Below, piece after piece: positions 8,271-23,000 of a stretch of DNA of 64,000 bases. The position numbers and the translations under genes are program-made. Below the pieces are notes generated by a model. That model was not told where the DNA came from, did not search any database, and saw nothing but the letters and a program-made list of their open reading frames with translations. Position 1 is the first letter of the stretch. Each line of letters opens with the position of its first letter. This stretch comes from Pavona decussata. Taxonomy: Eukaryota. The stretch lies in contig CDRNST010000038.1 in NCBI GenBank assembly GCA_977016875.1, positions 2,852,001 to 2,916,000 of the forward strand. Direction: 5' to 3'.

Positions 8271-9127
8271 AAAGCAAACATTCCAGGACTTTTTTTAAAG
8301 ACACAAAAAGTTCATGAACTGTATCACAGGAGGCAAGGGTTTTCTCCGGAATAAAAGGGTTCGGGATTTCCAAGTTAAATTATTTGAACCTAGGTCTAAT
8401 TTATACGCATTTTACTAGTGTCGGATGCAATTTAAGTCCACCGTAAATTAGTCCAATAACTACAACAACAACACGTTATACAGTTTGCTTTGAGAGGTGA
8501 ATGGCGAACAAACTGCGGAATCGATTACTGTCTCTAATAACTTGAATTACATTCGACACGACTAAAATGCGACGTATAAATTATTTATTGTTAAAACTTC
8601 TTAAATAAACCAGCTCCCCTTAAATCTCTTAAATTGTTCTCTTTGTATTTGGCTACTCATAATATGTCCCACCTTAATTAAACGTTTTGTTATCCTACTC
8701 TTAATTAACTGAAAAGCTTAAAATAATAATTATTAATTATTTCACTGTCTTTGCACGCTCCTTGCATGTGACTTGGCTTTGAGTGCAGCTTTACAAGCAA
8801 CCGAAATTTCCATGCTTCTTACTATAGCTGAGCAAACTAGAATGTCTGGGATCGTCTGGGTGGACGAGCGACTGCTTGACGTGTTATTCAAGAATTTTAA
8901 GCTCTTTCCGCCATATTCCGGCGTCCACACGAAAATTCCCGGTAGGCCTTTGCGCGAGTGGCTGTTCACTTTCACTGCACTGTTGTGGAAGCTTCAACAT
9001 GAACCCGAACTCTAAAAATCCGTGCGGCTATTCAATATTAACGTTTGTCTCTTTGAAGGTGAAAGCTTTCATCTTCCTATACTTGCAGCGGGATTAGAGA
9101 GAAGATAATGTCTGTGTCTTTTCTCTA

Positions 9128-9250
9128 TCACATTGCCGATTCGTGATGGCTTAAGCTCCCGGATTTCGATGATCTCGACGGCATAGTTCCTGAAGTCTTG
9201 TCAAAATTGATATACAAATGGTCTTCGTACATCCTCATATCGATGTATTC
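9128..9250 (-). CDS. RTK alternative terminal exon B (EYIDMRMYEDHLYINFDKTSGTMPSRSSKSGSLSHHESAM*)
   Basis: tttgcttgtctccag|GAA acceptor, phase 0, TGA at 9130-9128 followed by TAG. Confidence 0.75.
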   Translation of the reverse strand, partial: EYIDMRMYEDHLYINFDKTSGTMPSRSSKSGSLSHHESAM

Positions 9251-12200
9251 CTGGAGACAAGCAAACAGTACCATCAGCTCACTGGGCAAAATGATTGGCA
9301 CTTATCAATCAATTACTACGCGCTCGTAGAAGGCAGCACCTTTGAGGAAGTTAGATCGTGGCTGATGAACCGTCAAAATTGACGTACAAAGAGTCTTCGT
9401 AAGTCCTCATGTCTACGTATTCCTAGAAAGTGATTAGAAGAAGCGGATGTGAATGGACGAATGAATGATGAATGGTCCCTTCAAATCTATCGTTGCTCAG
9501 GAAGGGGGCGAGAAGGGGGGAGGGGGGAAGTTGTCTCCTAACATGCCCCCATCAAACGTATGAGTTTATGTCGTTGTGTCTTGATTACCTGAGGCACCAT
9601 GAGGCACCATGTAACATAAATATCGAAAAATGAGAAACTAATTATTCAAAACAAAGTAGTTTAAAGGCCGTCTGCTTATCCTTCTTTTCTTGCTTTAAAT
9701 AGTTAAAATAATATTTAAAAGAAAAATGTTGAATGAATGAACAAACGAACGAACAGACGGACGGACGGACGGAGGGAGGGAGGGAGGGATGGATGGATGG
9801 ACGGACGGACGGACGGACGGATGGATGGATGGATGGATGGACAAAATAAAAAGTACTCACTCTTTCGTCACTGAACAATTTTGTGAGGTGCTGAGACAGC
9901 TCTGTGAATGTTGGTCTTCGTTGAGGGGCCACTTGCCAACAGTCCAACATGAGCACGTATCTAGAATAAGACGAACAAGTGCTATTTCACCACCACCACT
10001 TCACCTCTACGGGTATATTACGAATTTACAAAATGACCAGCTACCAGCTCAGTTTGTAAAGTGCTGCGCGGCCACCGGTATCACAGAGGGCATGGGTTCG
10101 AATCCCGTTCTTTTCGTAGCTGCTTATAAGTTGCGTTCATATCTGTGAAGGTCTCTCATTTATTTCTTCTTTCATTCGCAATTCAAAAATAAACATCTCA
10201 TATTTTTCACTTCCAACAAGTGCTATTTCATTCTTTTTGTTTTCGTTACATTCTTCAGCATATTGGGATTGTTTCTATCGGGTCTCTAAAAGTTTAGTCT
10301 CCCTCGCAACCGTTTTTACTGTGAGGGCGTTGCGTGACGACACTAAAAACAGCTGCGAGGGAAACTACTAAAAGGTGTATTGTGCAGGGGGCGAGTCACC
10401 GTCCTACGACCCTAAACGTGATCAATATTTTCCGGCTTATTTCATTTCATTGTTAATTTTGGGGTCTTTTCTTTCTGATCTTTCCTTCGTAGCCTAGAGA
10501 TAATCCTGCACGCGGATGACTGAGTAACGAAAGTTTCTATCGCAGACATTTTTTGGCACATACAATTTCGCCCAAAAGCAGGGTTAACTGGTCACCAGTT
10601 AAAAACCCGTCAATTTAAATCTCCCTTTACTGTGATTGATTGAGTAAGTTTCCTGTGGGCGAGTTTGCATAAGGCGAATCGTACCTATGAAATTTAGTTT
10701 ACTTACAGTTCTTCTGAGCAGTGCTTAGGTTTGTCCATTCTGTAGCAGTCTTGAAGAAAGTTAATCACTTCTTGAGAATTCATGCCAGGATATGGAGACG
10801 CCCCTAATGAAAAAATCAGTCTGTCTTTAAGCCCTAACAGTGATCAGCATCAAATTTCTCCTTGTAATATCAATGCTTATTCAAACTCTGAGGTCAAGAG
10901 AATTAAGGATATGATCACCCAAGGGGAATTTTCTTGATAGTTTAATAAGTTCTGTCCAGTACTTTCATATGAAAAGTATGGGACCAAGATAGGAGAATTT
11001 GCTCTTTGATATTAGGGGTTAATAAATGCTACAGTTATTTCAAAAGATGACGTTTATCGGGATATGATGCTGTTCGTTTGAATGAGCTCCTAACAATTAT
11101 TTTACCAACTGTAAAGTCACTACTCGTTCAGATATGAGACATTTGAAATGAAAATACAATGACTGTTCTGATGGACTCTTTTCGTACCGAAATTTGATCT
11201 CTTCCTTATTAACTTGGTCCCTGCGTGTTATTCTGTCACATAGCCGATCTTGAGATGCAAAGTTTCGAGCATAATCTATTTGTGGTGAAAAACAAATTCT
11301 TACCTAATGTGACAATTTCCCAGAGAACAACGCCAAATGACCACCTATATAAAAAGGAAAATAAAAAAATTAATAATTGCTACCTGGGCAGTTCTTCTAG
11401 AATAATTTAAGTTTAATTCGTGTTTGTTCATTTAGCGTGATACCAGTATGACATTTCGCTGGTGAGGGCAGCGGAGGAGTCACATGCAATCAAAATTGCA
11501 TTGAACACACTTTCTGAAGATTGCCTGTTACGCTATGAGTTCGTGACGTAACCTTCGCGTCATATGACGCCATCATTTCCCGTTGCGAACCTCAAACAAA
11601 ACATCTTTGGAGGTGCTATCTATCCGAGGGGTCTCGCTGTCTAGCTTTATCCTTGGGAAATTATGGAGGAAGGACGGAATCGTCTCCCCTCCCGGCCTAG
11701 ATGGGGATAAAATATGTTTCGAATGCATTTACTCAGTATTGGCTCTGACTCCTTTTTAGACTATCGTAACAAAATGTTTCAAGGATTTACTTACACGTCG
11801 CTTTTTGATGTAGAGACTCCATCCAACAATGATTCAATTGCCATCCATTTGATAGGGAACCGACCTCCCTGTGAAGACAATAGTCAAATGACTAAATAAA
11901 CTGATTCTCGTAAAGTTGAACGTTCTATTCAGTATGGAATCCTCTCCACTGTTTCATTACGTACAAGAGATGCAAATAGGCTAACCGAATGGCCAGTAGG
12001 TGCACGCTGGTATGTTTAATGCAACCCTATTACATTGAAGTAAGTTTACTTTAAAAAATAGCCAAAAAATAACAATTGTCTGAAAAGTACCATGTTGCGT
12101 ATATAATACACGAGTTACATAAGTGACTTCTCCGTTCATTGTATCACTCGTCTTTTGTTCATGTATTCCTGGATTTGCTTGTTTATTCCTCCAATTCGTT

Positions 12201-15200
12201 TCTCGTTCGTCCCTTCGTTCTTTCGATCGTCCGTTCGTTCGGTTGCTCATTCATTATTTCTTAAATATTTCTGACATTCATTTGTTCGTCAAATGCCCAT
12301 TCTTTCATTCACCCCTTCTCTTTCATTTCTTTGCTCATGCGAATGACGCTTTACGTTCATCCGTTTGTTCCTTTGATCGCTCATATCGTTCATTACAAAG
12401 CAGAGCCTGTTTCCCGAGTTACCCAGATTTTGACCAAATCTTCAGCCTGACCGACATCGCAAACACTACCTTACCTGTGTTTTTCTTGTGTAATGGTCTT
12501 CCACGTAAATATCCCTGGCAAAGCCAAAGTCAGCGACCTTACAAACTTTGTTTTCGTCGATCAAAACGTTTCTAGCAGCGAGATCTCTGTGAACAACCTT
12601 CATGCCAGACAAATGAGCCATGCCTCTCGCGGTCTGTATAGCAAATGATAACAGGTCCCTTGAGCCGAGCTTTTCAACGGGTACTTTGTATAGATCTTGA
12701 TAGTATTTGTCTTCCACTCCTCGGCAGTGGCGAAGGTAGCTCTGGAGGTCACCGAACGCACAGAATTCCACTATGACCATCAGAGGCTCTGTTTTTTTTT
12801 TTAATGAGAAAAAAACGTCATATAACATTTGACTCAAGCAATTGACTATTGATAATGCGAGGCCGAGGACGAGGAGTTGAACTCGGGACTATCAAGAAAA
12901 AAACTCCGAGTAGTACGAAATACGAAACTAGTAAGAAACTCCAACTTGTTTGAAATCTGAAAGTATGACTATATCACCTTATGCTACTGATTGCAGACTG
13001 GAAAAATGTAGAACGCGAACATTCACGTGAAAGCTGCAGAGCAGTGCTTTTTTTCTGTGTTGCTGTTCGGTCATAGAGAAATTTAGAATTACATTTACGC
13101 CAAACGGCAAACGACAGAATGATCACGTGACCACGCTTACCCGATATTTGCCGCTCGCTGTTTTCAGTTTCTCAGTAAAATTGAGTTGTTTTGTGTTAGC
13201 ATCAAAGGACAATTATTTTGCACCATTTTCATCTATGTACTTATTTTCACAAGAAAACATAAACGCAAACCCCACGTTTACCGTTACCGTAAACGCGACT
13301 CTTAATCTCTCTCTCTATCTTCAAGTATGTGGATAGCATCCTTGCTTGAGAGCATTAAAACGTTAGCCTGTTTAGCAGTACGTTACTGTGGTGCTGCTCA
13401 TTGTGCTGTGAAGGTGGCCCTAACTTTTCAGTCTGTAGATCAAGTCTTATAGCGTGGCTATTCCAAAAAAAAAAAAAAAAAAAATAGAGCAATCTTGCTT
13501 TACGCTTAAAACAAAACGTATAGGAAAGGGCTTTGGAAATCGCTAGAGTCCCAAGAAAAAATCTCCTGAATACACCGGAAGACCATTCCTTGGAGAATAT
13601 GGCCTCTAACCATGGGCACATGAAATGCAACGGCTTGACAAGAAAACAGACCTTGTCTTGTACAACAGCCCAACAATCCAATAACGTTCGGATGAGGATC
13701 AATAAGCTTGAGTAGCTCCAACTCCGCTATTAGGTCTCTTCTGGCCGTTTCACTGTCACATTCTGATTAAAACATAAGAAAAGGAAGTCAGAAATGCTGC
13801 AAGGAATGGTTTAAGACACTAATGACAGACGAAGAACATTACAAATCAATGGAGAGCACAAATAGCATCATATTCAACCTGCGCCAAGCAGCTGCAAATT
13901 TTCATAAATTACATGAGAACCTGCGTTTACCAATTAAAATTTAAATGAGTTGCGTTTGTGTAGCCTCCATCGCAGGCGCAGGCGCTCTTTTTATTCGTCA
14001 CGCAATCTTTCCTCCTCAACAAAATGAAAAGAACGATAGGGGAGGAAAGATAGATTGCGTGACGAGCTAAGGGTGGCTGAACGACAGAAAACCGTGTATT
14101 GTGAATTTAAGTGTGATCAAAGATGATCGGGTTTCGGTTATTTTTTGCGGTTACTTTTATCACTGAACCAATTTAAAGTCAAGATTAAACCAATTATGAC
14201 TTGATCACACGCATTTTTGCGCGCTTGGCGTTTTTTAGAGGTTTCTGGAGCCCTATTCACGAACGGCCCTTCTGAGTTCAGATGTATCCTTAGTATTGCT
14301 TATAAAAAAACAGTCTATTGTTGGAATAACACTAAACAGTAGTATTTTGCTAAGTGGTAATACTTGGTATACATGCATCTTAGCTTGGAAGGGTTTCCTG
14401 AATATGGCCCCTGTTTGTAGGTTATAATGATTGCTTTCCTTTCGGTCTTACAATACGCAATCGAATCCTTTCTAGATGCGATCCATTGCTAGTGCTAACC
14501 GAACAGATTCACAAGAATCTTTCTGGCCCAGAAAAAACGGCATGAAGCGCTTTTTAAAATCTTACCTTTGACAATCTTTACCGCCACATACATTTTGCCC
14601 ACGCATCCTTTAATGCCCTGCGCCTGACCTTTCATTACTAGGCCAAACGCGCCAGATCCCAGCACCACTTGCAGGTCCACCCTGTTGCGCGGGAATTCCC
14701 AGGGACTGTTGGATAACGAGATGGCCTCAGCTCCTTGGGGCATATCCGGCTGCTGGGGGAGGGGGATGTTGGGGATGTGATGATGATCGTTCAATAACTG
14801 CGAAATAAGAATAAAAACAGGTGTGAAGTTGAGGACATTTGACTTTTTTAACCTCAAAGGGAACCTCCACTCTGACAACAAACTTTGACGTTGCATTGTT
14901 GGAAACGTCTAAATTCTAAATTTTAGTTTGAAAAGTAGAAATAACATTCAAGTGTGCTAAAAATTTGATTCGATTATCGTCTATTTTCGCTTTTAAATTT
15001 CCTAATCTCCCAATCCTCAAAAAGTGCTTCTTCACGTAACACTATCGTGAGTTTGGATAGTGTATCAATGCGCGTTAACAACCGTGACTAGTTTGGCACT
15101 AGTTTGGTAAATACTAATGCTTTCTATTTATTTGGAAAGTAGCCCATGGATAAATCACCATGTTTTCATCGAGTTAAAGAAACATGGATTTTGACCAAAC

Positions 15201-18200
15201 ATTCTTGCAGTAATTGCCAATTAGCTGCCGATCCCTACACAATTGAGCTAAATTTCCCCCCTAGATTTCACGTTCTTTTCTCACCGAAGTCATTTCAGCT
15301 TGTTCCTGTTGACTAGTTGGTCGGCTGTTGACCGGCGTATTTGCCGGCGGTGTGCTGTTCTTGTGGATTTTTCTGACGAAGCAAATCACGCAGATGATGG
15401 CGATTAATATCACTAAAAAGGCGCCACCGACTCCGGCAATCAACAAGGTCATGTCGCGAGATAGTCCCATGAAACCTTTAGAGGACTGAGCACTGGTGTG
15501 GGATTCTGAAACAAAGAGATACGAAATGTAGTCAAAAGTTAGAACTCTTTCTGTCTTTCTCTCTTTCTTGTCAATCATTTTTAGTACGGTGAAGGGATCC
15601 AAGACGTAGCACAGTAACTTGAATGCTATGACAGGTTGCTTAACGAAGTCCCTAAACGTTCTCAGAATGTTAAGGGGACATTAAATGGTGTGCCGCTAGC
15701 ACTAATGACAAGAATGATGGATCAGAGAATTAACTCTGCAGTGTATGTTAAAGTGCTAAAGTCGATCCGTGAATTTCCCACTGAACGTTACCGTATTTAC
15801 TCGAATAAGCGCCGCCCTCGGTTAAGCGCCGCCATGGAGCGGAAGGGTCATTAAAATAAGCGCCGTAGCTCCGTTGCGGCGCTTATTCGAGTATTTCCAT
15901 AAGATGAGCAACAGTCAGGACATTCACTCGATGTCGGACATCGAGTGAAGAGTTGTTGAAAACCTGCAGAAAAGTATTGACGAGGCTGTTATGAAAGCGA
16001 AGACTTAGGTTAGCTTGAAGTCGGTAGTCCATGAAAAATTACTCATGAAGTAAATTAATTTCTACAATCAAAATGTTCTGTCTTTGTGGTATGAGCCTTT
16101 TAAATAAGCGCCGCGCTCGAATAAGCGCCGCACAGGAGACACGAAAAATTAAATAAGCGCCGCGGCGCTTATTCGAGTAAATACGGTAACCCTAGTAAGG
16201 AAATGGGAGACTGCGCGAGACAAAGACAAAAATCTTTGACCTCGGCGGAAGTAGAATCCACGGACTCCGGATTTGATCGTCCGTTGCTTTACCAACTGAG
16301 CTATAAGGCCAGACGGGAGAAAGTCGTGGGTGACTATGGTAATAATTGCAGTAATGTAGGATCCAAGGAATGTTGAACACAATGAATCTCAGAATGTTAA
16401 ATTATAGAAGACAAGAACGATCCTTACGGCAGTCAGTAAAAAGGACGAAAACAGAATTTACCCTATTGATTATTTCTGTGTCAACCCTATTTTGTCTGAG
16501 TCAAAGGGGGCTCCGCCACAAGCTTCAAGAGCATTACGTCCTAAATGGGACGATGATGTCACATGTCGCCGGAATTTCGCCATCTTGGATTTCTCGATTT
16601 CTTAAAACCTCAGACGTCAACCGTCAAAATTGACTCAAAAATAATCGAAAACCAGTAAATAAACGCTAAAAGGATATAAATATCACAGCATTGCGAAGAT
16701 GATTCTCAACAGATGCCTGGCCAAACTTTGCTGGCATGGAAACAACATGTTTCGTGAACAATGATATAACATACCAAACTTTTCCCAGATAGACTTCGGG
16801 AAAAATTACAAAGGGTTGTCTTAGAGCGGTTTCCAATTGACTGTCGTAAAACCAAAACCAAAGTAATTATTCTGGATGAACAGATGTAAACAATGCAACC
16901 AGCCAATCAGAATTCGAAGCAAATACATGTAACTGGCGCCAAGCGCGGGAAAACGGGTACGGCCAAAACACGATTGGCTCTGGTTTGGACTCCCATTGGT
17001 TGAGAAAGTGGCGCGAGTTTTGTTAACCAATCACAGAGCTTAGTAATGAAAAACAAAACCAAACGCGGAATTACTTTCGACACTCAATAGAAAATCGCTC
17101 TGTTACAAAACACCTCACATACCCGCTTTACTGGTCTTAGCCAGATAGGTCGAACTAGGGGGACTGGTGCCCAGGCTATTTGTTGCTAGGATACGGAACT
17201 TGTAGTCGGTGTTGGACTTAAGATCCATAATTGTGTACTTGACTCTGTTTGGCGGTTTGATTTGAATCTCTTGCCATCTACTTTCTGATTCTTCTTTGTG
17301 CTGCAGCTTTAAAGCGATCAGTTCCAGGCCCCCATTATCTCCAAACTTCCATCTCACTACCGCGCTTGATACGCCCGCCTCTACGTCGATAATGGTTGGG
17401 CTTTCTGGGGGAGCTGAGGAGTGAAAAACCAGAAGTTTTAAGAGCAATACGACCGAAATGGGAGGAAGATGTCACATGGCGTTACAATTACGCCACCTTG
17501 GATTTCTTAATTTCTTTAAAACTTCAGATAACCGTCAAGATTGACTCAAAAATACTCGAGACCTGTAAACAAACGCTTAAAGGGTACAAATATCACAGCA
17601 TTGCGACCATATGCTTGAAATAACATTCTCAACAGATGCCTGGCCAAATTTTGTTGCCATGGAAACATCATGGTACGTGAAAAGTGATATAAAATATTAA
17701 ACTGTTCCCAGATATACTTCGGGAAAAATTACAAAGGTTTGTCTTATTACAAAACGACTCACATACCTGCTTTACCGGTCTTAGCCAAATAGGTTGTACT
17801 AGGAGGACTGGTGCCCAGGTTGTTTGTTGCTAGGATACGGAACTTGTAGTTGGTGTTAGACTTAAGATCCATAATTGTGTACTTGACCCTGTTTGGCGGT
17901 TTGATTTGAATCTCTTGCCATCTGGTCTCTGATCCTTCTTTGTACTGCAGCTTTAAAGCATTGAGTTCTAGGCCCCCGTCATCTCCAAACTTCCATGTCA
18001 CTACTGCGTTTGATACACTAGTCTCTACGTCAATAATAGTTGGGCTATCTGGGCGAGCTGCAGTTGCGTGGGAAAAGAAAATAAAAAAAAAGTGAGCAAT
18101 AACGCGTGTACAAACCACTGCTGTCTGTTACTAATAATAACAACTAATTACATGCAGCAGGGATGGCGCAGTGGTGAGAGTGCTCGCTTCCCATCAATGT

Positions 18201-20023
18201 GGACCGGGTTCGATTCCCGGAGTTGATACCTTATGTGGGCTGAGTTTGTTGTTGGTTCTAGTGCCTGCTTCGAGGGTGTTTCTCCAAGTTCTCCGTCCCC
18301 CAACACTTCCAAATTGCGATTCAACTCTTGAGGGCCACTCAAATTAACCTCGAGTTACCGTGGTGCTACCCTCACTTAACATTGCTACTATTATTTTTGC
18401 GCATCAAGTTCTGAAAACAAAACTTACTATTTCCCGTCAGTGAAATCTCCGCTGTGTCCCTGCCTAATGTATTCACCACCTCACAGGTGTAGGTCGTCCA
18501 GGATTCTGTTGTAACGTCCTTGATTTCAAGAGTGCTTCGACTCGTTACGTTACCCTGTACCGTTGTCACGCTGTGGCCGCTGATTTCTTCTCCCCTGCCG
18601 ATACTGAGCGTATCGTTGTTAGCGTCCTTCCAGGACCACGTGAATTTTGGCTCCGGATTCCCGCGAGACTCGCATATAACGCTGGCTTCCTCACCCACGT
18701 TAGCGTGGAACTTTCTTTTACTAAATATTCTGGGAGGTTCTAAAAAATAAAACAAGCAACAGACCATATTATTATACAACATACGGCAACACTGCCCAAA
18801 AATGGTCATGGTGCCCTGAATATTCGTTGTTCGTAGTCAACAGATATCCTACAATATACGTAATTTCGTGTGTCGGGGAGAAAAATGGCAAAATAAAGAT
18901 CGTCTACAGCTTTTCTGCAATAAAACTGTGCCTCGTTATCGATGTGCTGAATAATAAAACAATTATCCTGCTCAATCGTATTGAAAATAAAAAAAAAACT
19001 TATGGAATATCCCCAGATCTCAGCCAGGCCTCGTCGGCTAAGTATCAGGCGATATTCCGCGCGATTTTCGCAGGATAATTGTTAATTATACGACTGAATC
19101 ATCTAAAGGGCGCGTGTTTTGTGTATGACCACGCGCGCGAGACTTGTCCGTGAAATCCAGTTAACTTAAACATTCAAACTGAAAAATGCCAAAGCTACGT
19201 TACCAAAGACAGTGACAGTAAAGCTTGTGCGATCCGTGCCGAGCTCGTTGGAGGCTATACAGATATATGTTCCAGTGTCCTCAGATGAAGCCTTTTTTAT
19301 GAGCAATGTTCCATTGGCCTCCCAACTGATCCTGTCCTTTGGAAGCTGTCCATTAACTTTCTTCCACGTCACCTTTGCCTTTGGAAACGCGCTGACGGTG
19401 CAGTCGAGCAGGAGATCGCGTGATTGTGTGGACTGAGTAATATTCAGTATGGGTGGAGTCGTGCTTCTGATTATGGGACGGGCTGAAAGATGACAAAACA
19501 TTATGCACTTGACAAACTTTTGTCAGTGAAAAGACTGCGTAAAGTTCTGGTTTATCAAATTCCCTTAAGGACAGTACCTACTAATACCGAAGTATTTCAG
19601 CGCAGTTTACTATGCGGGAAAAGCAGATATTAGCAAGGGTTATTGGAATCCAAAAACCAAATTGGGGTAACCACGCATTTTTTAGAGATAAATAATCAAC
19701 AATTATTCTAAAAAGCAGTAAAATACAAAGCAATACATGACGTTTTTTTTTTTTTCAAATTGAAGATTTATTATCTCTGAAAAATCCATGGTTACCCCCA
19801 ATTTTCTTTTTGGATATCAAAAGCATTTGCTAATTTCTGCTTTCTCCACATAGTTTTAAACCACGCAAAAATATCCCTGTATTAGTAGGCACCACCCATA
19901 GGAAACCCGAGTATCCTGAGGTATGCGCAGTAACAAAAGTAGGCACCGTCTTGGACATCTGTGTTTAGAGTAGTGGCTCCCAAGAAGATCAATTGCCGGA
20001 TACGACTTCGTGCGTAAATAAGA

Positions 20024-20079
<56 letters not shown>

Positions 20080-23000
20080 GGGGAGTGATCAGGGGGTGTT
20101 GAGAGAAAAGTTATAAACGTGGAGATTACAAAATAAAGCAATTTCTGTTGTATTGATTTTTAATTTGGAGTGTGGGATTATAATCCCTGTTTACACTTCC
20201 CCCCCCCCCCCCCCTCCCTCTCTCCTGGATCAATAGCTAAACAGCAGAAAAACATTCAAATCAAGCAATGTCGTTGGAAACTTGATTCACGGGAAATGAA
20301 AATCGTCTGCGCAACAGCCTGCATTGAAAGATGAAGTATACGAGAAATCTCGAAAACATCTTGCGATCTTGAGACCTTCCTGGTTAGGTGCTGTTTGTTC
20401 GTTTTTGTTTTTGTTTTTTTTGTTTTTTTAACACGGATGTTCGTCATCATTCTGCAGCATATCCTTGCCAAGTTGCCATGAGTATCCCTGTAGCTGTCCT
20501 AAAGTCATAACGAATTTTATTCCAGTTGTATTCCTGAGGTTTGTGGCAAACTGGGTACTCTTTGCGTATTACGCGCGTACTAACCAAATTCCACATTTAT
20601 CGCCTTTTCACTTTATCACCACACAGACCGTTCTCGACATCATTGATCCTTTCAGTAAAGTGAGACATACGTAGTCTCCCTCGCAGCCGTTCAGTGTCTC
20701 GTCACGCAACGCTCCTCACCAGGAAGGAGCGTTGCGTGACGAGACAGAACGGCTGCGAGGGAGACTGGGACATATGCCGCACTGATATCAATCCTCAGGA
20801 ACACGGTGACAACTTCCATACAGGGGATACACGGGGAGGCCCCGAAAGGCCTGTCTTCTTTCCCTCGTAATTAACGAAAGAGTAGCAAAATTTTCGGAAG
20901 GGAACCGAAAGGGTAGAAAGCAAATCCAAGTATTAGAAAGGTTAGCAGGGTTGAAATTCCTGCCAGAAATTATGACGTGGTGATTTCGCTTGTCGCAGGA
21001 CAAAAAAGGACAAAGACATTTCTTTCGTTTTCTTGTGTTACGGCGCTTATGTGACCATTTTTGACGTAAAGGGAATTGTATTTATGAGCAGGTGACCACG
21101 GTGAAAGTTGGTGCATGAAAGTTTAAGAGATGGAACCTCAAGGTGGAGGTTTAAAAGTATGAAGTGTTGACCATAAAGTGTGGTTTTCACTAGCGACGCA
21201 AGCACAGGAACAAGAGCTTTATGTCAAGTGAAAGCGAACGCGACGCAAGCACAAGCGGAGGCAGAAGAAAAGGAAAACTTTTCATCCTTGTGATTGCGCT
21301 TGCACTTGTGCTTATGCTTGCGTCGAGGCCGTTCTCACTGTGAAGTAAGCACTCTTATGCTTCTGCTTGTGCTTGCACCTGTACTTGAGTCGCTAGTGAA
21401 AACCAGCCCTAACCCATCTTTATCTTTGTCAAGATGTAGCGATGATCCCCAAATGTTGAACTGATGTTCCAACTATTTGATAACAACGCTCAAATAAGTT
21501 GCTGTCAGAACATGATTAACGTTGCCAGAAATTGAAACCAAACGCAACAGTTTCTACTCAACTAACAAGAAAAAGGTAGATTTTTAACAGTGTCGAATTT
21601 CGACGGTATCTTGTTTGAAGAAAAAGCGCGCGAGGCTTAATTTACTTTAATTCTGTCAGACGTAGGTTTTAACTCCTCCAATTCGTTTTTGAGGTAAAGG
21701 TATATTCCCTCAATTACGTTTAAGGCTGTGGGTGAGCTTTCTAGGGCAGAGGATTTCTCGGATCTGACTGTTTGACTAAACACAATGGCCGCTGATTTGC
21801 TTCAATAGTGCGGATTGTCAGTAACATTGGGTCCACCTGTCCCCGATGGAACTGTTGTGGTCAAGATTAAAAAGTTGCCAGTCTTGTTCATTTTTCAGGT
21901 TTTGTCCTGTAGTTTAAAACAATGTTCCTTGGATATCGGTGCAAATTTCCCTAGAAACCTGTGTAATTCAATCTGAGGCCGGGAAATTGCTTGGGTAAGG
22001 AGGAGCCCAAATCATAAGTAGAAATGTTTTATGGTTGAGCACCCAGCCTTAGAATTGCATATCGCTTCCAAACGATAACTCTGAAAACTGAGAATGTATC
22101 TAGAAGCCAAACGCCGTGTTTAAAACAAAATGTTAAAAAGCTTGTCAAACAAAGTGGATTTACAAAATGACAGTTCCACGGTTTCGCTCTTGTAAGTGGC
22201 GCTTTGTGTTTCTATCGACCAAGATGACTATTTGTACCTTACAACGTCTGTTTGTAATCGGACTAAACTCACCTTTAACATAAAGCAGCACATTTTCTGT
22301 GGTGTTTAGAGGGCTGCCACCTGCAATAAACAGCGCACGGCAGGAGTAGTTTCCGTGATCATAGCGGTTAACCCTGTTGAGTTGAATGGAATGGCGTCCG
22401 ACCACAGAGATGGATCGCTGAGTGTATTTGGAATGCGAGCTTTGACTGACGGAGAAAATTTTCTTTGTTCCATTAAACCAGGACGTTTGATACCACATTC
22501 CTCCTTTGATCAAAGTATTACAGGGAAGGGTAACATTTTGACCTTCCCTTGTTGTGATGGTCAATGATGACGCAACAAACAGACCTGTAACGAAAGACAA
22601 CAAGAATTTCAAATCAACCTTTTAAGGTCCTATATTAACATGCATTTTTTCATCGCTGTTCTTGATACTCTTCTTATGAAACTAGTTGAGAGAATTTGTT
22701 AAATATCAAAACCATTTTCTCTACCCGGTATCTTTCAACTGAAGGATTACACTTCTGCCAATCACACAGTGACAATTTCAAAAGCTATATGAGCGGGGAA
22801 CGGGGATGGCGCAGTGGTGAGAGCACTCGCCTCCCACCAACTTGCTCGGGTATGTGGGTCGAGTTTGTTGTTGGTTTTTGCCCTTGCTCCGAGAGGTTTT
22901 TCTCCGGGTACTCCGGTTTTCCCTCTCCTATAAAACCAACATTTTCAAATTCCAATAGGACATTCTCACTATGGCGTCATTTGACTACAACTACCAGAAT

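What the first reader, a model, noticed from the sequence alone, without database searches (positions are those of the whole stretch)
9128..9424. Duplicated alternative last exons give the RTK two different phosphotyrosine docking tails
Seen: after the last kinase exon (phase 0) there are two paralogous exons 172 bp apart. Each has its own AG acceptor and stop: EYVDMRTYEDSLYVNFDGSSATI* and EYIDMRMYEDHLYINFDKTSGTMPSRSSKSGSLSHHESAM*. All three tyrosines are kept in both, and changes next to them are conservative (V/I). Known: pYxxM binds PI3K p85 SH2 and pYxN binds Grb2 SH2; vertebrate RET also uses alternative C-tails (RET9/RET51). Inference: both tails are under selection and form a splice-controlled signalling switch that arose by exon duplication. 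Tail B ends in a class I PDZ-like S-A-M. Neither exon is in the ORF track.
Basis: partly seen in the sequence, partly recalled or inferred. Interest (0 to 1): 0.75.

Follow-up and report, generated by a model that had tools for sequence, protein, structure and literature searches.

The report
Two spliced tails on coral receptor
A coral cell-surface signalling receptor (a tyrosine kinase of the FGFR/RET/Cad96Ca group) ends in one of two duplicated short tails chosen by splicing; stony corals and sea anemones both keep two tails, and I found no paper that describes it.

Summary
On the minus strand, the last kinase exon (9960-9861) of a receptor tyrosine kinase (3 Ig, 2 FN3, TM, kinase) is followed by two paralogous coding segments. 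Each has an AG acceptor and a stop: tail A 9422-9351 (23 aa) and tail B 9250-9128 (40 aa).

RNA contigs show both acceptors are used. One run joins the kinase exon straight to 9250. Three runs (two samples) show the bubble expected when 9422 is also used.

One correction: these are two nested acceptors of a single terminal exon. The A transcript reads on through the spacer and tail B, which become its 3'UTR.

Both tails are annotated as RefSeq isoforms in Acropora, Montipora, Porites, Pocillopora, Oculina and Orbicella. Tail A is always 23 aa. The tail B core is almost invariant, with 9-11 synonymous against 1-2 replacement codon differences.

Sea anemones also carry two alternative tails in the same order. 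An octocoral and Hydra have one.

All three tyrosines are kept in both tails. What differs consistently is the C-terminus: GSS[AL]T[IV] in A, ES-x-[ML] (PDZ class I-like) in B. The first tyrosine aligns with the FGFR1 EYLDL site. The function is inferred, not shown.

The parts
9861..9960 (-). Last kinase exon (end of the C-lobe, ...DCWQ...RRPTF...FSDER). It ends in phase 0, with donor GT at 9860-9859.
   Evidence: Pfam PK_Tyr_Ser-Thr match. RNA joint 9960->10707 with CT..AC ends in all 4 runs. Sequence.
9423..9860 (-). Intron removed in both isoforms. It holds a (CCAT/CCGT)n microsatellite at 9745-9842.
   Evidence: Zero or near-zero RNA depth over 9447-9831. TRF.
9351..9422 (-). Tail A: proximal acceptor AG at 9424-9423, 23 codons plus stop (E-Y-V-D-M...N-F-D-G-S-S-A-T-I).
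   Evidence: Sequence. A 226-nt RNA contig covers 9221-9421 plus 25 further letters in X1, X2 and X10. That is exactly the length simulated for splice 9861->9422. Orthologous 23-aa tails occur in 6 other coral genera.
9251..9350 (-). Spacer: 3'UTR in the A isoform and the last part of the intron in the B isoform. It contains the B polypyrimidine tract and AG (9252-9251) and a conserved inverted repeat, TGATTG...CAATCA, at about 9292-9314.
   Evidence: The RNA contig is continuous across 9251|9250. Alignment of three genera.
9128..9250 (-). Tail B: distal acceptor, 40 codons plus stop. Core EYIDMRMYEDHLYINFD, a Ser/Lys-rich stretch, and the end E-S-A-M.
   Evidence: Sequence. X4 contig of 1832 nt joins 10809-10707 | 9960-9860 | 9249-8600. 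Orthologues.
8600..9127 (-). 3'UTR shared by both isoforms. It continues below 8600 and its end was not determined.
   Evidence: One contig per run covers 8600-9250, and the contigs run over the lower end of the stretch laid. The only AATAAA in 9128-7400 is at 8589.
10707..22621 (-). Rest of the gene: Ig (22621-22163, 19522-19169, 18836-18375), FN3 (18127-17762, 17471-17118), TM/juxtamembrane (15680-15264), kinase exons (14908.., 13766.., 12888-12469, 11379.., 10809-10707). These coordinates are open frames that contain the exons, not exact exon ends.
   Evidence: Stop-to-stop frames. Pfam.

Best explanation
SHOWN.
- The gene is a single-pass receptor tyrosine kinase with Ig and FN3 domains and a kinase of the FGFR/RET/Cad96Ca group.
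- The start of its terminal exon, meaning the acceptor plus about 70 nt that encode the post-kinase docking motif E-Y-x-D-M-x-x-Y-E-D-x-L-Y-x-N-F-D, was duplicated in tandem.
- The spliceosome joins the last kinase exon (donor at 9861) either to the proximal acceptor (9422) or to the distal one (9250).
- The proximal choice gives a 23-aa tail that stops at 9351. The spacer and the whole tail-B sequence then become 3'UTR.
- The distal choice removes tail A with the intron and gives the 40-aa tail B.
- Both forms occur in RNA of this species. One sample showed only B.
- The arrangement is conserved across both major clades of stony corals. A two-tail arrangement in the same order (divergent copy upstream, conservative copy downstream) exists in sea anemones. 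One octocoral and Hydra have a single tail.

INFERRED.
- After receptor activation the three tyrosines are phosphorylated and recruit SH2 proteins. Y1 (Y-[IV]-D-M) is at the place of FGFR1 EYLDL and RET DYLDL, so PLC-gamma and/or PI3K p85 are candidates. Y3 (Y-[IV]-N-F) fits Grb2.
- Both tails keep these sites, so the splice choice most likely changes the distal part and the carboxy-terminus rather than which effectors dock.
- Tail B carries a Ser/Lys-rich stretch ending E-S-x-[M/L]-COOH, a class I PDZ-ligand consensus. Tail A ends S-[A/L]-T-[I/V]-COOH.
- The switch would therefore tune scaffolding, localisation or trafficking of the receptor, much as RET9 and RET51 differ.
For: - Gene anatomy.
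- Kinase affinity: FGFR2 scores 311 bits and RET 304 bits over the kinase of the Pocillopora orthologue. Cad96Ca and RET are the nearest named bilaterian proteins.
- Splicing: the X4 contig joins the kinase exon to 9249/9250. X1, X2 and X10 show an upstream contig that ends 5 nt past 9860, a 226-nt contig over 9221-9421 plus 25 letters, and a shared contig that starts at 9250, with no depth over 9447-9830. A k=31 de Bruijn simulation of the two isoforms gives exactly these pieces (212-like upstream, 226, 54, 651), and a B-only set gives one contig.
- Conservation: A and B isoforms are present in Acropora, Montipora, Porites, Pocillopora, Oculina and Orbicella. Both exons, each with an AG, are in Pocillopora and Porites DNA.
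- Substitution pattern.
- Anemones: isoforms and genomic order.
- Single copy in Dendronephthya and Hydra.
- Y1 aligns with FGFR1 EYLDL in the HMMER alignment and with RET DYLDL. Cad96Ca tails carry D-Y-I-E-L-x-R-F-P-D-H-x-Y-Y-N.
- Drosophila Stitcher/Cad96Ca drives PI3K-I/TORC1 through an unknown adaptor (PMC3720245) and PLC-gamma calcium release (abstract of bioRxiv 10.1101/2025.06.02.657513).
- RET9 and RET51 differ in binding SHC, GRB2, c-CBL and SHANK3 (PMC3459860).
Against: - No phosphorylation or binding data exist for any cnidarian orthologue.
- The 25 letters beyond 9421 in the 226-nt contig were not printed, so the A junction rests on exact length arithmetic and on the absence of upstream intron depth, not on read letters.
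- Contig depths (A about 0.4-0.5 of the total in three runs, none in X4) are rough figures, and the runs are labelled RNA only by guess. The intron-less joints do show that they hold cDNA.
- Tail A is less constrained. Orbicella has Y-V-S-L (no Met at +3) and Montipora has Y-D-I-F (no Asn at +2), so the SH2 motif readings do not hold for every tail A.
- Met is an unusual last residue for a PDZ ligand.
- RefSeq X-isoforms are computed models, and I could not see their RNA support.
Confidence: 0.8

Rival explanations
1. Tail A is a decaying duplicate, and its use is splicing noise at a cryptic acceptor. Only tail B would be functional.
For: Tail A evolves faster: 4-9 replacement against 4-6 synonymous codon differences. 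It loses single motif residues in Orbicella and Montipora. One RNA run shows no A contig.
Against: The AG acceptor, frame, 23-codon length, stop position, all three Tyr and the GSS[AL]T[IV] end are kept in seven coral genera of both major clades. Exon A is 74-83% identical in DNA where its flanks are 35-44%. The A-specific contig has about 40-50% of the depth of the shared contigs in three runs.
Confidence: 0.05
2. Both isoforms are real, but the protein difference is neutral. The choice of acceptor would matter at the mRNA level, because the A form has a 3'UTR longer by the spacer and tail B, with possible effects on stability, localisation or translation.
For: Both tails keep the same three tyrosines. 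The spacer carries a conserved 23-nt inverted repeat that is present only in A-form mRNA.
Against: Isoform-specific C-terminal ends are conserved at the protein level: GSSATI or GSSLTV in A, and ES-x-[ML] in B. Synonymous changes are frequent in both tails. Selection therefore acts on the peptides.
Confidence: 0.1
3. The two segments are two true alternative last exons, each with its own cleavage/polyadenylation site.
For: In sea anemones the two tails lie 1.1 kb apart, which would leave room for a separate poly(A) site there.
Against: In this species the A-specific RNA contig runs without a break through the spacer into tail B (9251|9250), and the shared contig continues to below 8600. There is no AATAAA or ATTAAA between 9351 and 9128, and the only one down to 7400 is at 8589.
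Confidence: 0.05

Closest known systems
RET9 / RET51 alternative C-terminal tails of vertebrate RET
   Same: Both are receptor tyrosine kinases of the same kinase group (RET 304 bits). Alternative 3' processing after the last common exon gives two C-termini. The RET isoforms differ in adaptor and scaffold binding (SHC, GRB2, c-CBL, SHANK3) and in trafficking (PMC3459860). A Tyr right after the kinase domain (RET D-Y-L-D-L) aligns with Y1 here.
   Different: The RET tails are unrelated sequences, and RET51 adds extra docking tyrosines. Here the two tails are paralogues that keep the same three tyrosines. The choice is between two nested acceptors 172 nt apart. There are no cadherin domains in the ectodomain. 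The resemblance is analogy, not shown homology, of the splice event.
Arthropod Cad96Ca / Stitcher ('Ret-like' RTK)
   Same: It is the nearest named bilaterian protein over the C-lobe plus tail (52-56% identity). Its tail carries the same module, D-Y-I-E-L-x-R-F-P-D-H-x-Y-Y-N, right after the kinase. It signals through PI3K-I/TORC1 (PMC3720245) and PLC-gamma (bioRxiv 10.1101/2025.06.02.657513).
   Different: Cad96Ca has a cadherin ectodomain, one tail in the proteins retrieved, Phe in place of the second Tyr, and a different conserved end (LSGEKL).
FGFR1 Tyr766 (E-Y-L-D-L) PLC-gamma docking site
   Same: HMMER aligns the coral E-Y-I-D-M with FGFR1 E-Y-L-D-L at the same distance from the kinase end. 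The kinase scores highest against FGFR2 and FGFR1 among solved structures. NCBI names the orthologues 'FGFR2/4-like'.
   Different: The ectodomain has FN3 domain(s) after three Ig. The tail has Met at +3 and two further conserved Tyr. That Tyr766 binds PLC-gamma is from memory, not tested here.
Alternative splicing that arises by tandem exon duplication (the principle of Kondrashov and Koonin 2001; cited from memory)
   Same: The alternative segments are paralogous and lie in tandem. Each has its own acceptor, and they are mutually exclusive in the protein.
   Different: The classical cases are internal, mutually exclusive exons. Here the duplicated unit is the start of the terminal exon. Exclusivity comes from the stop codon of the upstream copy, so the downstream copy stays in the mRNA as UTR.
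RefSeq computed isoforms X1/X2... of the orthologues
   Same: The same two tails are already present as model isoforms in Acropora, Montipora, Porites, Pocillopora, Oculina, Orbicella, Nematostella, Actinia and Exaiptasia.
   Different: They are unannotated as to meaning. None of the papers listed by five full-text searches describes the duplicated tails; these searches returned up to thousands of matches and only the top 1-10 of each were seen.

Membership tests
Receptor tyrosine kinase, FGFR/RET/Cad96Ca kinase group | Tyrosine kinase catalytic domain with the HRDLAARN and DFG motifs | tested here: met
   Pfam PK_Tyr_Ser-Thr, E 1e-29 on exon 12888-12469. The translation shows HRDLAARNVL and DFGFARD.
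Receptor tyrosine kinase, FGFR/RET/Cad96Ca kinase group | Single-pass receptor with an extracellular ligand-binding region | tested here: met
   Three Ig and two FN3 exons, plus a hydrophobic stretch in 15680-15264. The full-length orthologue P0008 has a signal peptide-like start, Ig x3, FN3, TM and kinase.
Receptor tyrosine kinase, FGFR/RET/Cad96Ca kinase group | Kinase closer to this group than to other RTK groups | tested here: met
   FGFR2 311 bits and RET 304 bits are the top solved relatives. Cad96Ca and RET follow the cnidarian orthologues. No tree with all RTK groups was built.
RET / Cad96Ca proper | Cadherin repeats in the ectodomain | tested here: not met
   Only Ig and FN3 families were found in the window exons and in the orthologues' precomputed Pfam lists.
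FGFR proper | Ectodomain of two or three Ig domains only, and FGF binding | tested here: inconclusive
   Three Ig domains are present, but one FN3 (two in this window) follows them. Ligand binding is not testable.
Alternative splicing from tandem exon duplication | The alternative segments are paralogues in tandem | tested here: met
   15 of 23 residues and 42 of 51 nt are shared. These are the only two copies in the genome.
Alternative splicing from tandem exon duplication | Both splice junctions are used in RNA | tested here: met
   The B junction is directly in a contig (X4). The A junction follows from the 226-nt contig and the bubble geometry in X1, X2 and X10, reproduced by simulation. 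The letters of the A junction itself were not printed.
Alternative splicing from tandem exon duplication | Both copies are conserved in relatives, and an outgroup has a single copy | tested here: met
   Six further coral genera and three anemones have two copies. Dendronephthya and Hydra have one.
RET9/RET51-type isoform switch | Isoform-specific docking tyrosine(s) | tested here: not met
   All three Tyr are present in every tail A and tail B examined.
RET9/RET51-type isoform switch | Isoforms bind different adaptors or scaffolds and traffic differently | not testable with these tools
   This needs binding and cell-biology experiments.
Class I PDZ ligand (x-[S/T]-x-hydrophobic-COOH), tail B | Consensus at the last four residues, conserved in orthologues | tested here: met
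   ESAM, ESIM and ESPL at the end of tail B in all 8 coral genera. The anemone upstream tails end STTF, STMF or STFF.
Class I PDZ ligand (x-[S/T]-x-hydrophobic-COOH), tail B | Binding to a PDZ domain | not testable with these tools
   No experiment or complex prediction was run.
SH2 docking motifs (pYxxM p85; pYxN Grb2; pY-[ILV]-[DE]-[LM] PLC-gamma type) | Motif present at conserved tyrosines | tested here: met
   Tail B has YIDM and YINF, invariant in corals. Tail A has them except Orbicella (YVSL) and Montipora (YDIF). Y1 aligns with FGFR1 EYLDL.
SH2 docking motifs (pYxxM p85; pYxN Grb2; pY-[ILV]-[DE]-[LM] PLC-gamma type) | The tyrosines are phosphorylated and bind the named SH2 proteins | not testable with these tools
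   No phosphoproteomic or binding data were available.

The most novel reading that the evidence does not exclude
The two-tail arrangement would be one ancient splice switch, born in the hexacorallian ancestor before stony corals and sea anemones parted. It holds the PLC-gamma/PI3K/Grb2-type docking tyrosines constant while turning a PDZ-ligand carboxy-terminus on or off (ES-x-[ML] in coral tail B, ST-x-F in the anemone upstream tail). It would thus control where and with which scaffold the receptor signals, not which effectors it can recruit. That would be a cnidarian counterpart of the RET9/RET51 logic in the same kinase group.
Probability: 0.3. Interest if true: 0.7.

Novelty: new variant of a known kind. 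Interest (0 to 1): 0.5.

Why it matters
Alternative C-terminal tails are a known way to diversify receptor tyrosine kinase output in vertebrates (RET, FGFR2, ErbB4; the last two from memory). Very little is known about regulated signalling isoforms in early-branching animals.

This case is clean and deeply conserved, and RNA supports it. It sits in a receptor whose nearest bilaterian relatives (Cad96Ca/Stitcher, RET, FGFR) control wound repair, growth and calcium waves.

The two tails keep the same tyrosines and differ mainly at the carboxy-terminus. That gives a direct and simple test of whether scaffold binding, rather than effector choice, is what such switches regulate. It can be tested in Nematostella, Exaiptasia or Acropora.

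It is also a textbook-quality example of a protein isoform born by tandem duplication inside a terminal exon. A paper on Pocillopora acuta lists a 'Cad96Ca' receptor among genes up-regulated in aboral (skeleton-forming) tissue (PMC13581030). I could not establish whether that is this gene.

Tried and rejected
1. Looking up genomic loci by isoform failed for six proteins, because only the longest product of a gene is on record. Loci were obtained for Pocillopora, Porites, Nematostella, Dendronephthya, Hydra and Actinia only, and all 12 look-ups are used.
2. A tree of the 23-residue tails (30 rows) gave a polytomy. Coral B and anemone-upstream each group, but coral A joins neither. One duplication against two independent ones is therefore unresolved. 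Pairwise scores also show that coral A is no closer to the anemone upstream copy than to the downstream one.
3. A search for more anemone proteins with the upstream-type tail found only Exaiptasia and Actinia.
4. Covariation in the conserved spacer hairpin: the stem never varies among three genera, so there is no evidence for or against a structure.
5. dN/dS between the two paralogues within the window was rejected as uninformative, with only two synonymous-only codons.
6. Earlier notes of the scan gave only the FN3 note and nothing by words.
7. None of the papers listed by five full-text searches describes these isoforms; each search showed only its top 1-10 matches.
Exons were searched one at a time by reference. 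Exon pieces were joined only inside a local script, to compute expected contig lengths.
9. The 3' end of the mRNA was not determined.
Full report
**What is in the sequence.** The finding lies on the minus strand. One search shows the end of a kinase exon (...TTCAGTGACGAAAGA, last base 9861) followed by GTGAGT. Further down there are two AG-preceded segments that both start GAATAC.
- Tail A runs 9422-9351 (23 codons plus TAA).
- Tail B runs 9250-9128 (40 codons plus TGA).

Over the first 17 codons, 42 of 51 nt and 13 of 17 residues agree. Over all 23 codons of tail A, 15 residues agree, and the three tyrosines are kept.

Outside the coding parts the two regions share only a pyrimidine tract and AG. 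In the whole 602-Mb assembly the tail occurs only at these two places.

**The gene.** Stop-to-stop frames and Pfam give, upstream on the same strand, three Ig exons, two FN3 exons, a transmembrane/juxtamembrane exon and six tyrosine-kinase exons (HRDLAARN, DFG).
- Among solved structures, the kinase of the Pocillopora orthologue scores 311 bits with FGFR2 and 304 bits with RET (single window exon).
- Among named proteins, the cnidarian orthologues (called 'FGFR2/4-like' or 'Cad96Ca' by NCBI) are followed by arthropod Cad96Ca and vertebrate RET at 50-56% identity over the C-lobe and tail.

**RNA evidence.** One search found 14 runs of the same organism that hold part of the stretch. Contigs of four of them (three samples, four studies) were laid on 8600-10900.

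All four carry the intron-less joint 9960->10707 (CT..AC on the plus strand, which is GT..AG on the gene strand), so they hold cDNA.

In X4, one 1832-nt contig reads 10809-10707, then 9960-9860, then 9249-8600. This is the kinase-to-tail-B junction; the G at the joint fits either side. That run has no depth over 9293-9446.

In X1, X2 and X10 the picture is as follows:
- The upstream contig stops 5 letters after 9860.
- A separate 226-nt contig covers 9221-9421 and has 25 further letters that do not continue into the genome at 9422 and above.
- A third contig starts exactly at 9250.
- Depth over 9447-9830 is zero, or about 3 in X2.

I simulated a k=31 de Bruijn graph of the two proposed isoforms. 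It gives an upstream unitig ending in GAATAC, an A-specific unitig of exactly 226 nt (24 nt of kinase exon plus 9422-9221), a 54-nt B-junction unitig, and a shared unitig starting at 9250. A B-only set gives one unbroken contig, as in X4.

From this I conclude:
- Both acceptors are used.
- The A transcript reads through the spacer into tail B, so the two are nested alternative 3' splice sites of one terminal exon, not two last exons with separate poly(A) sites.
- Contig depths suggest A is roughly 40-50% of transcripts in three runs and undetected in one. These figures are rough.
- The letters of the A junction were not printed, so that junction rests on the length match and on the missing intron depth.

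**Relatives.** A profile-free search with one kinase exon led to full-length orthologues, and cluster look-ups gave their isoforms.

In Pocillopora verrucosa and P. damicornis, Oculina, Orbicella, Montipora (two species), Acropora (three species) and Porites lutea, RefSeq lists one isoform with a B-type tail and one with an A-type tail. A Logan transcript protein of the Porites cluster (P0324) also carries tail A.
- Tail A is 23 residues in every genus. It ends GSSATI (Acropora, Montipora, Porites, this window) or GSSLTV (Pocillopora, Oculina, Orbicella).
- The core of tail B, EYIDMRMYE[DN]HLYINFD, is invariant but for one position. The tail always ends ES-x-[M/L].
- Genomic DNA of Pocillopora (L003) and Porites (L004) shows both segments in the same order, each behind a pyrimidine tract and AG, with spacers of 77 and 92 nt.

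Among window, Pocillopora and Porites, DNA identity by segment is:

| Segment | Identity |
|---|---|
| Exon A | 74-83% |
| Exon B | 65-77% |
| Spacer | 47-69% |
| Intron upstream and 3' sequence downstream | 35-44% |

Over the first 23 codons, tail B has 9-11 synonymous-only against 1-2 replacement differences. Tail A has 4-6 against 4-9. Both tails are under purifying selection, with B under much stronger selection.

**Age of the duplication.** Sea anemones also have two alternative tails as RefSeq isoforms (Nematostella, Actinia, Exaiptasia).
- In Nematostella (L005) and Actinia (L008) the divergent copy (...Y-M-N-F-D-S..., ending STTF or STMF) lies upstream.
- The conservative copy (...D-H-L-Y-V-N-F-D...) lies about 1.1 kb downstream. 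This is the same order as in corals.
- The octocoral Dendronephthya (L006) and Hydra (L007) have a single copy between the last kinase exon and 6 kb downstream.
- A tree of the 23-residue tails is unresolved.

So either one duplication in the hexacorallian ancestor or separate duplications in corals and in anemones remain possible. The coral duplication predates the split of the two main stony-coral clades. That the genera listed span both clades is from general knowledge of coral phylogeny.

**What the tails are likely to do (inference).** The module is older than the duplication.
- Arthropod Cad96Ca tails read D-Y-I-E-L-x-R-F-P-D-H-x-Y-Y-N.
- RET has D-Y-L-D-L at the same place.
- HMMER aligns the coral E-Y-I-D-M with FGFR1 E-Y-L-D-L.

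From memory, those vertebrate tyrosines (FGFR1 Y766, RET Y1015) dock PLC-gamma. Met at +3 also fits PI3K p85, and Y-[IV]-N-F fits Grb2. Drosophila Stitcher/Cad96Ca activates PI3K-I/TORC1 through an unknown adaptor (PMC3720245), and PLC-gamma-dependent calcium release according to a preprint abstract.

The consistent differences are:
- His (B) against Ser or Asn (A) at Y2+3.
- The Ser/Lys-rich extension of B.
- The carboxy-termini: ES-x-[ML] is a class I PDZ-ligand consensus, and S-[AL]-T-[IV] is not.

The anemone upstream tails end in a conserved S-T-x-F, also a class I consensus, while their downstream tails have no conserved end. RET9 and RET51 likewise differ in SHANK3, GRB2, SHC and c-CBL binding and in trafficking (PMC3459860). 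The most likely role is therefore a splice-controlled change of scaffold binding or localisation. This is not shown.

**Novelty.** The isoforms exist as computed RefSeq models in nine genera, so the raw fact is in databases. None of the papers listed by five full-text searches describes the duplicated tails or their conservation; some of these searches matched hundreds to thousands of papers and only the top 1-10 were shown.

I class it as a new variant of a known kind: alternative RTK C-tails, and isoforms born by tandem exon duplication. The unusual points are that the alternatives are paralogues nested in one terminal exon, and that the arrangement is so old.

**Limits.**
- The runs were laid as contigs, not reads.
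- Run type is guessed.
- Only three coral genomes gave DNA.
Exons were searched singly by reference, and the joined form was used only in a local script.

Noticed in passing
window 17118-18127 (minus strand): The window's gene has two very similar FN3 exons (frames 18127-17762 and 17471-17118). The full-length orthologues retrieved are about 830-870 aa, and the Nematostella protein shows a single FN3. Whether both exons are spliced in was not checked.
   Followed up: partly
window 9292-9314 (minus strand); L004 about 17393-17415; L003 about 14183-14205: There is a conserved element in the spacer between the two tails: AATTGATTGAT, then 6-8 nt, then CAATCA. It forms a 6-bp inverted repeat about 40-60 nt upstream of the tail-B acceptor and is identical in three coral genera, while the rest of the spacer varies. 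It could be a splicing regulator or a hairpin. There is no covariation to test it.
   Followed up: partly
window 10825-10900: RNA contig depth jumps to 2,000-100,000, with many different loose ends starting at 10825. This is a very abundant repeated element (SINE/MITE-like) in the intron upstream of exon 10809-10707.
   Followed up: no
window 9745-9842: An imperfect tetranucleotide microsatellite (CCAT/CCGT/CCCT on the gene strand, about 24 copies) lies in the last intron. The reads tool skipped it.
   Followed up: no
proteins P0229, P0007, P0154, P0032, P0048 (Acropora, Montipora and unnamed): Other coral receptor kinases (for example a CUB+Ig 'FGFR3-like' protein) end in a related module, ...N-M-H-I-Y-D-N-x-L-Y-x-N-[LV]-E-D-L. 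The three-part tail motif is therefore shared by several cnidarian RTK paralogues.
   Followed up: no
RefSeq isoforms of Acropora (857/849/841/833 aa) and Montipora (871/863/855 aa): Besides the tail choice, there is a second alternative segment of 8 residues elsewhere in the protein. It combines freely with either tail in Acropora (X1-X4). It was not located.
   Followed up: no
L003 16290-18340, L004 21396-21574, L008 22903-26045: The gene downstream of the receptor is a large ankyrin/ARM (ARMC5-like) protein in Pocillopora, Porites and Actinia, so the neighbourhood is conserved between corals and an anemone. The window below 8000 was not examined for it.
   Followed up: no
window 9176, 9118, 9262, 9269: The RNA contigs differ from the window at these places. 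At 9176 the change is a synonymous third-position change in tail B (Ser codon 25), seen in one run. At 9118 the change is in the 3'UTR, seen in all four runs. At 9262 and 9269 the changes lie in the pyrimidine tract before the B acceptor, seen in one run. None lies in tail A.
   Followed up: partly
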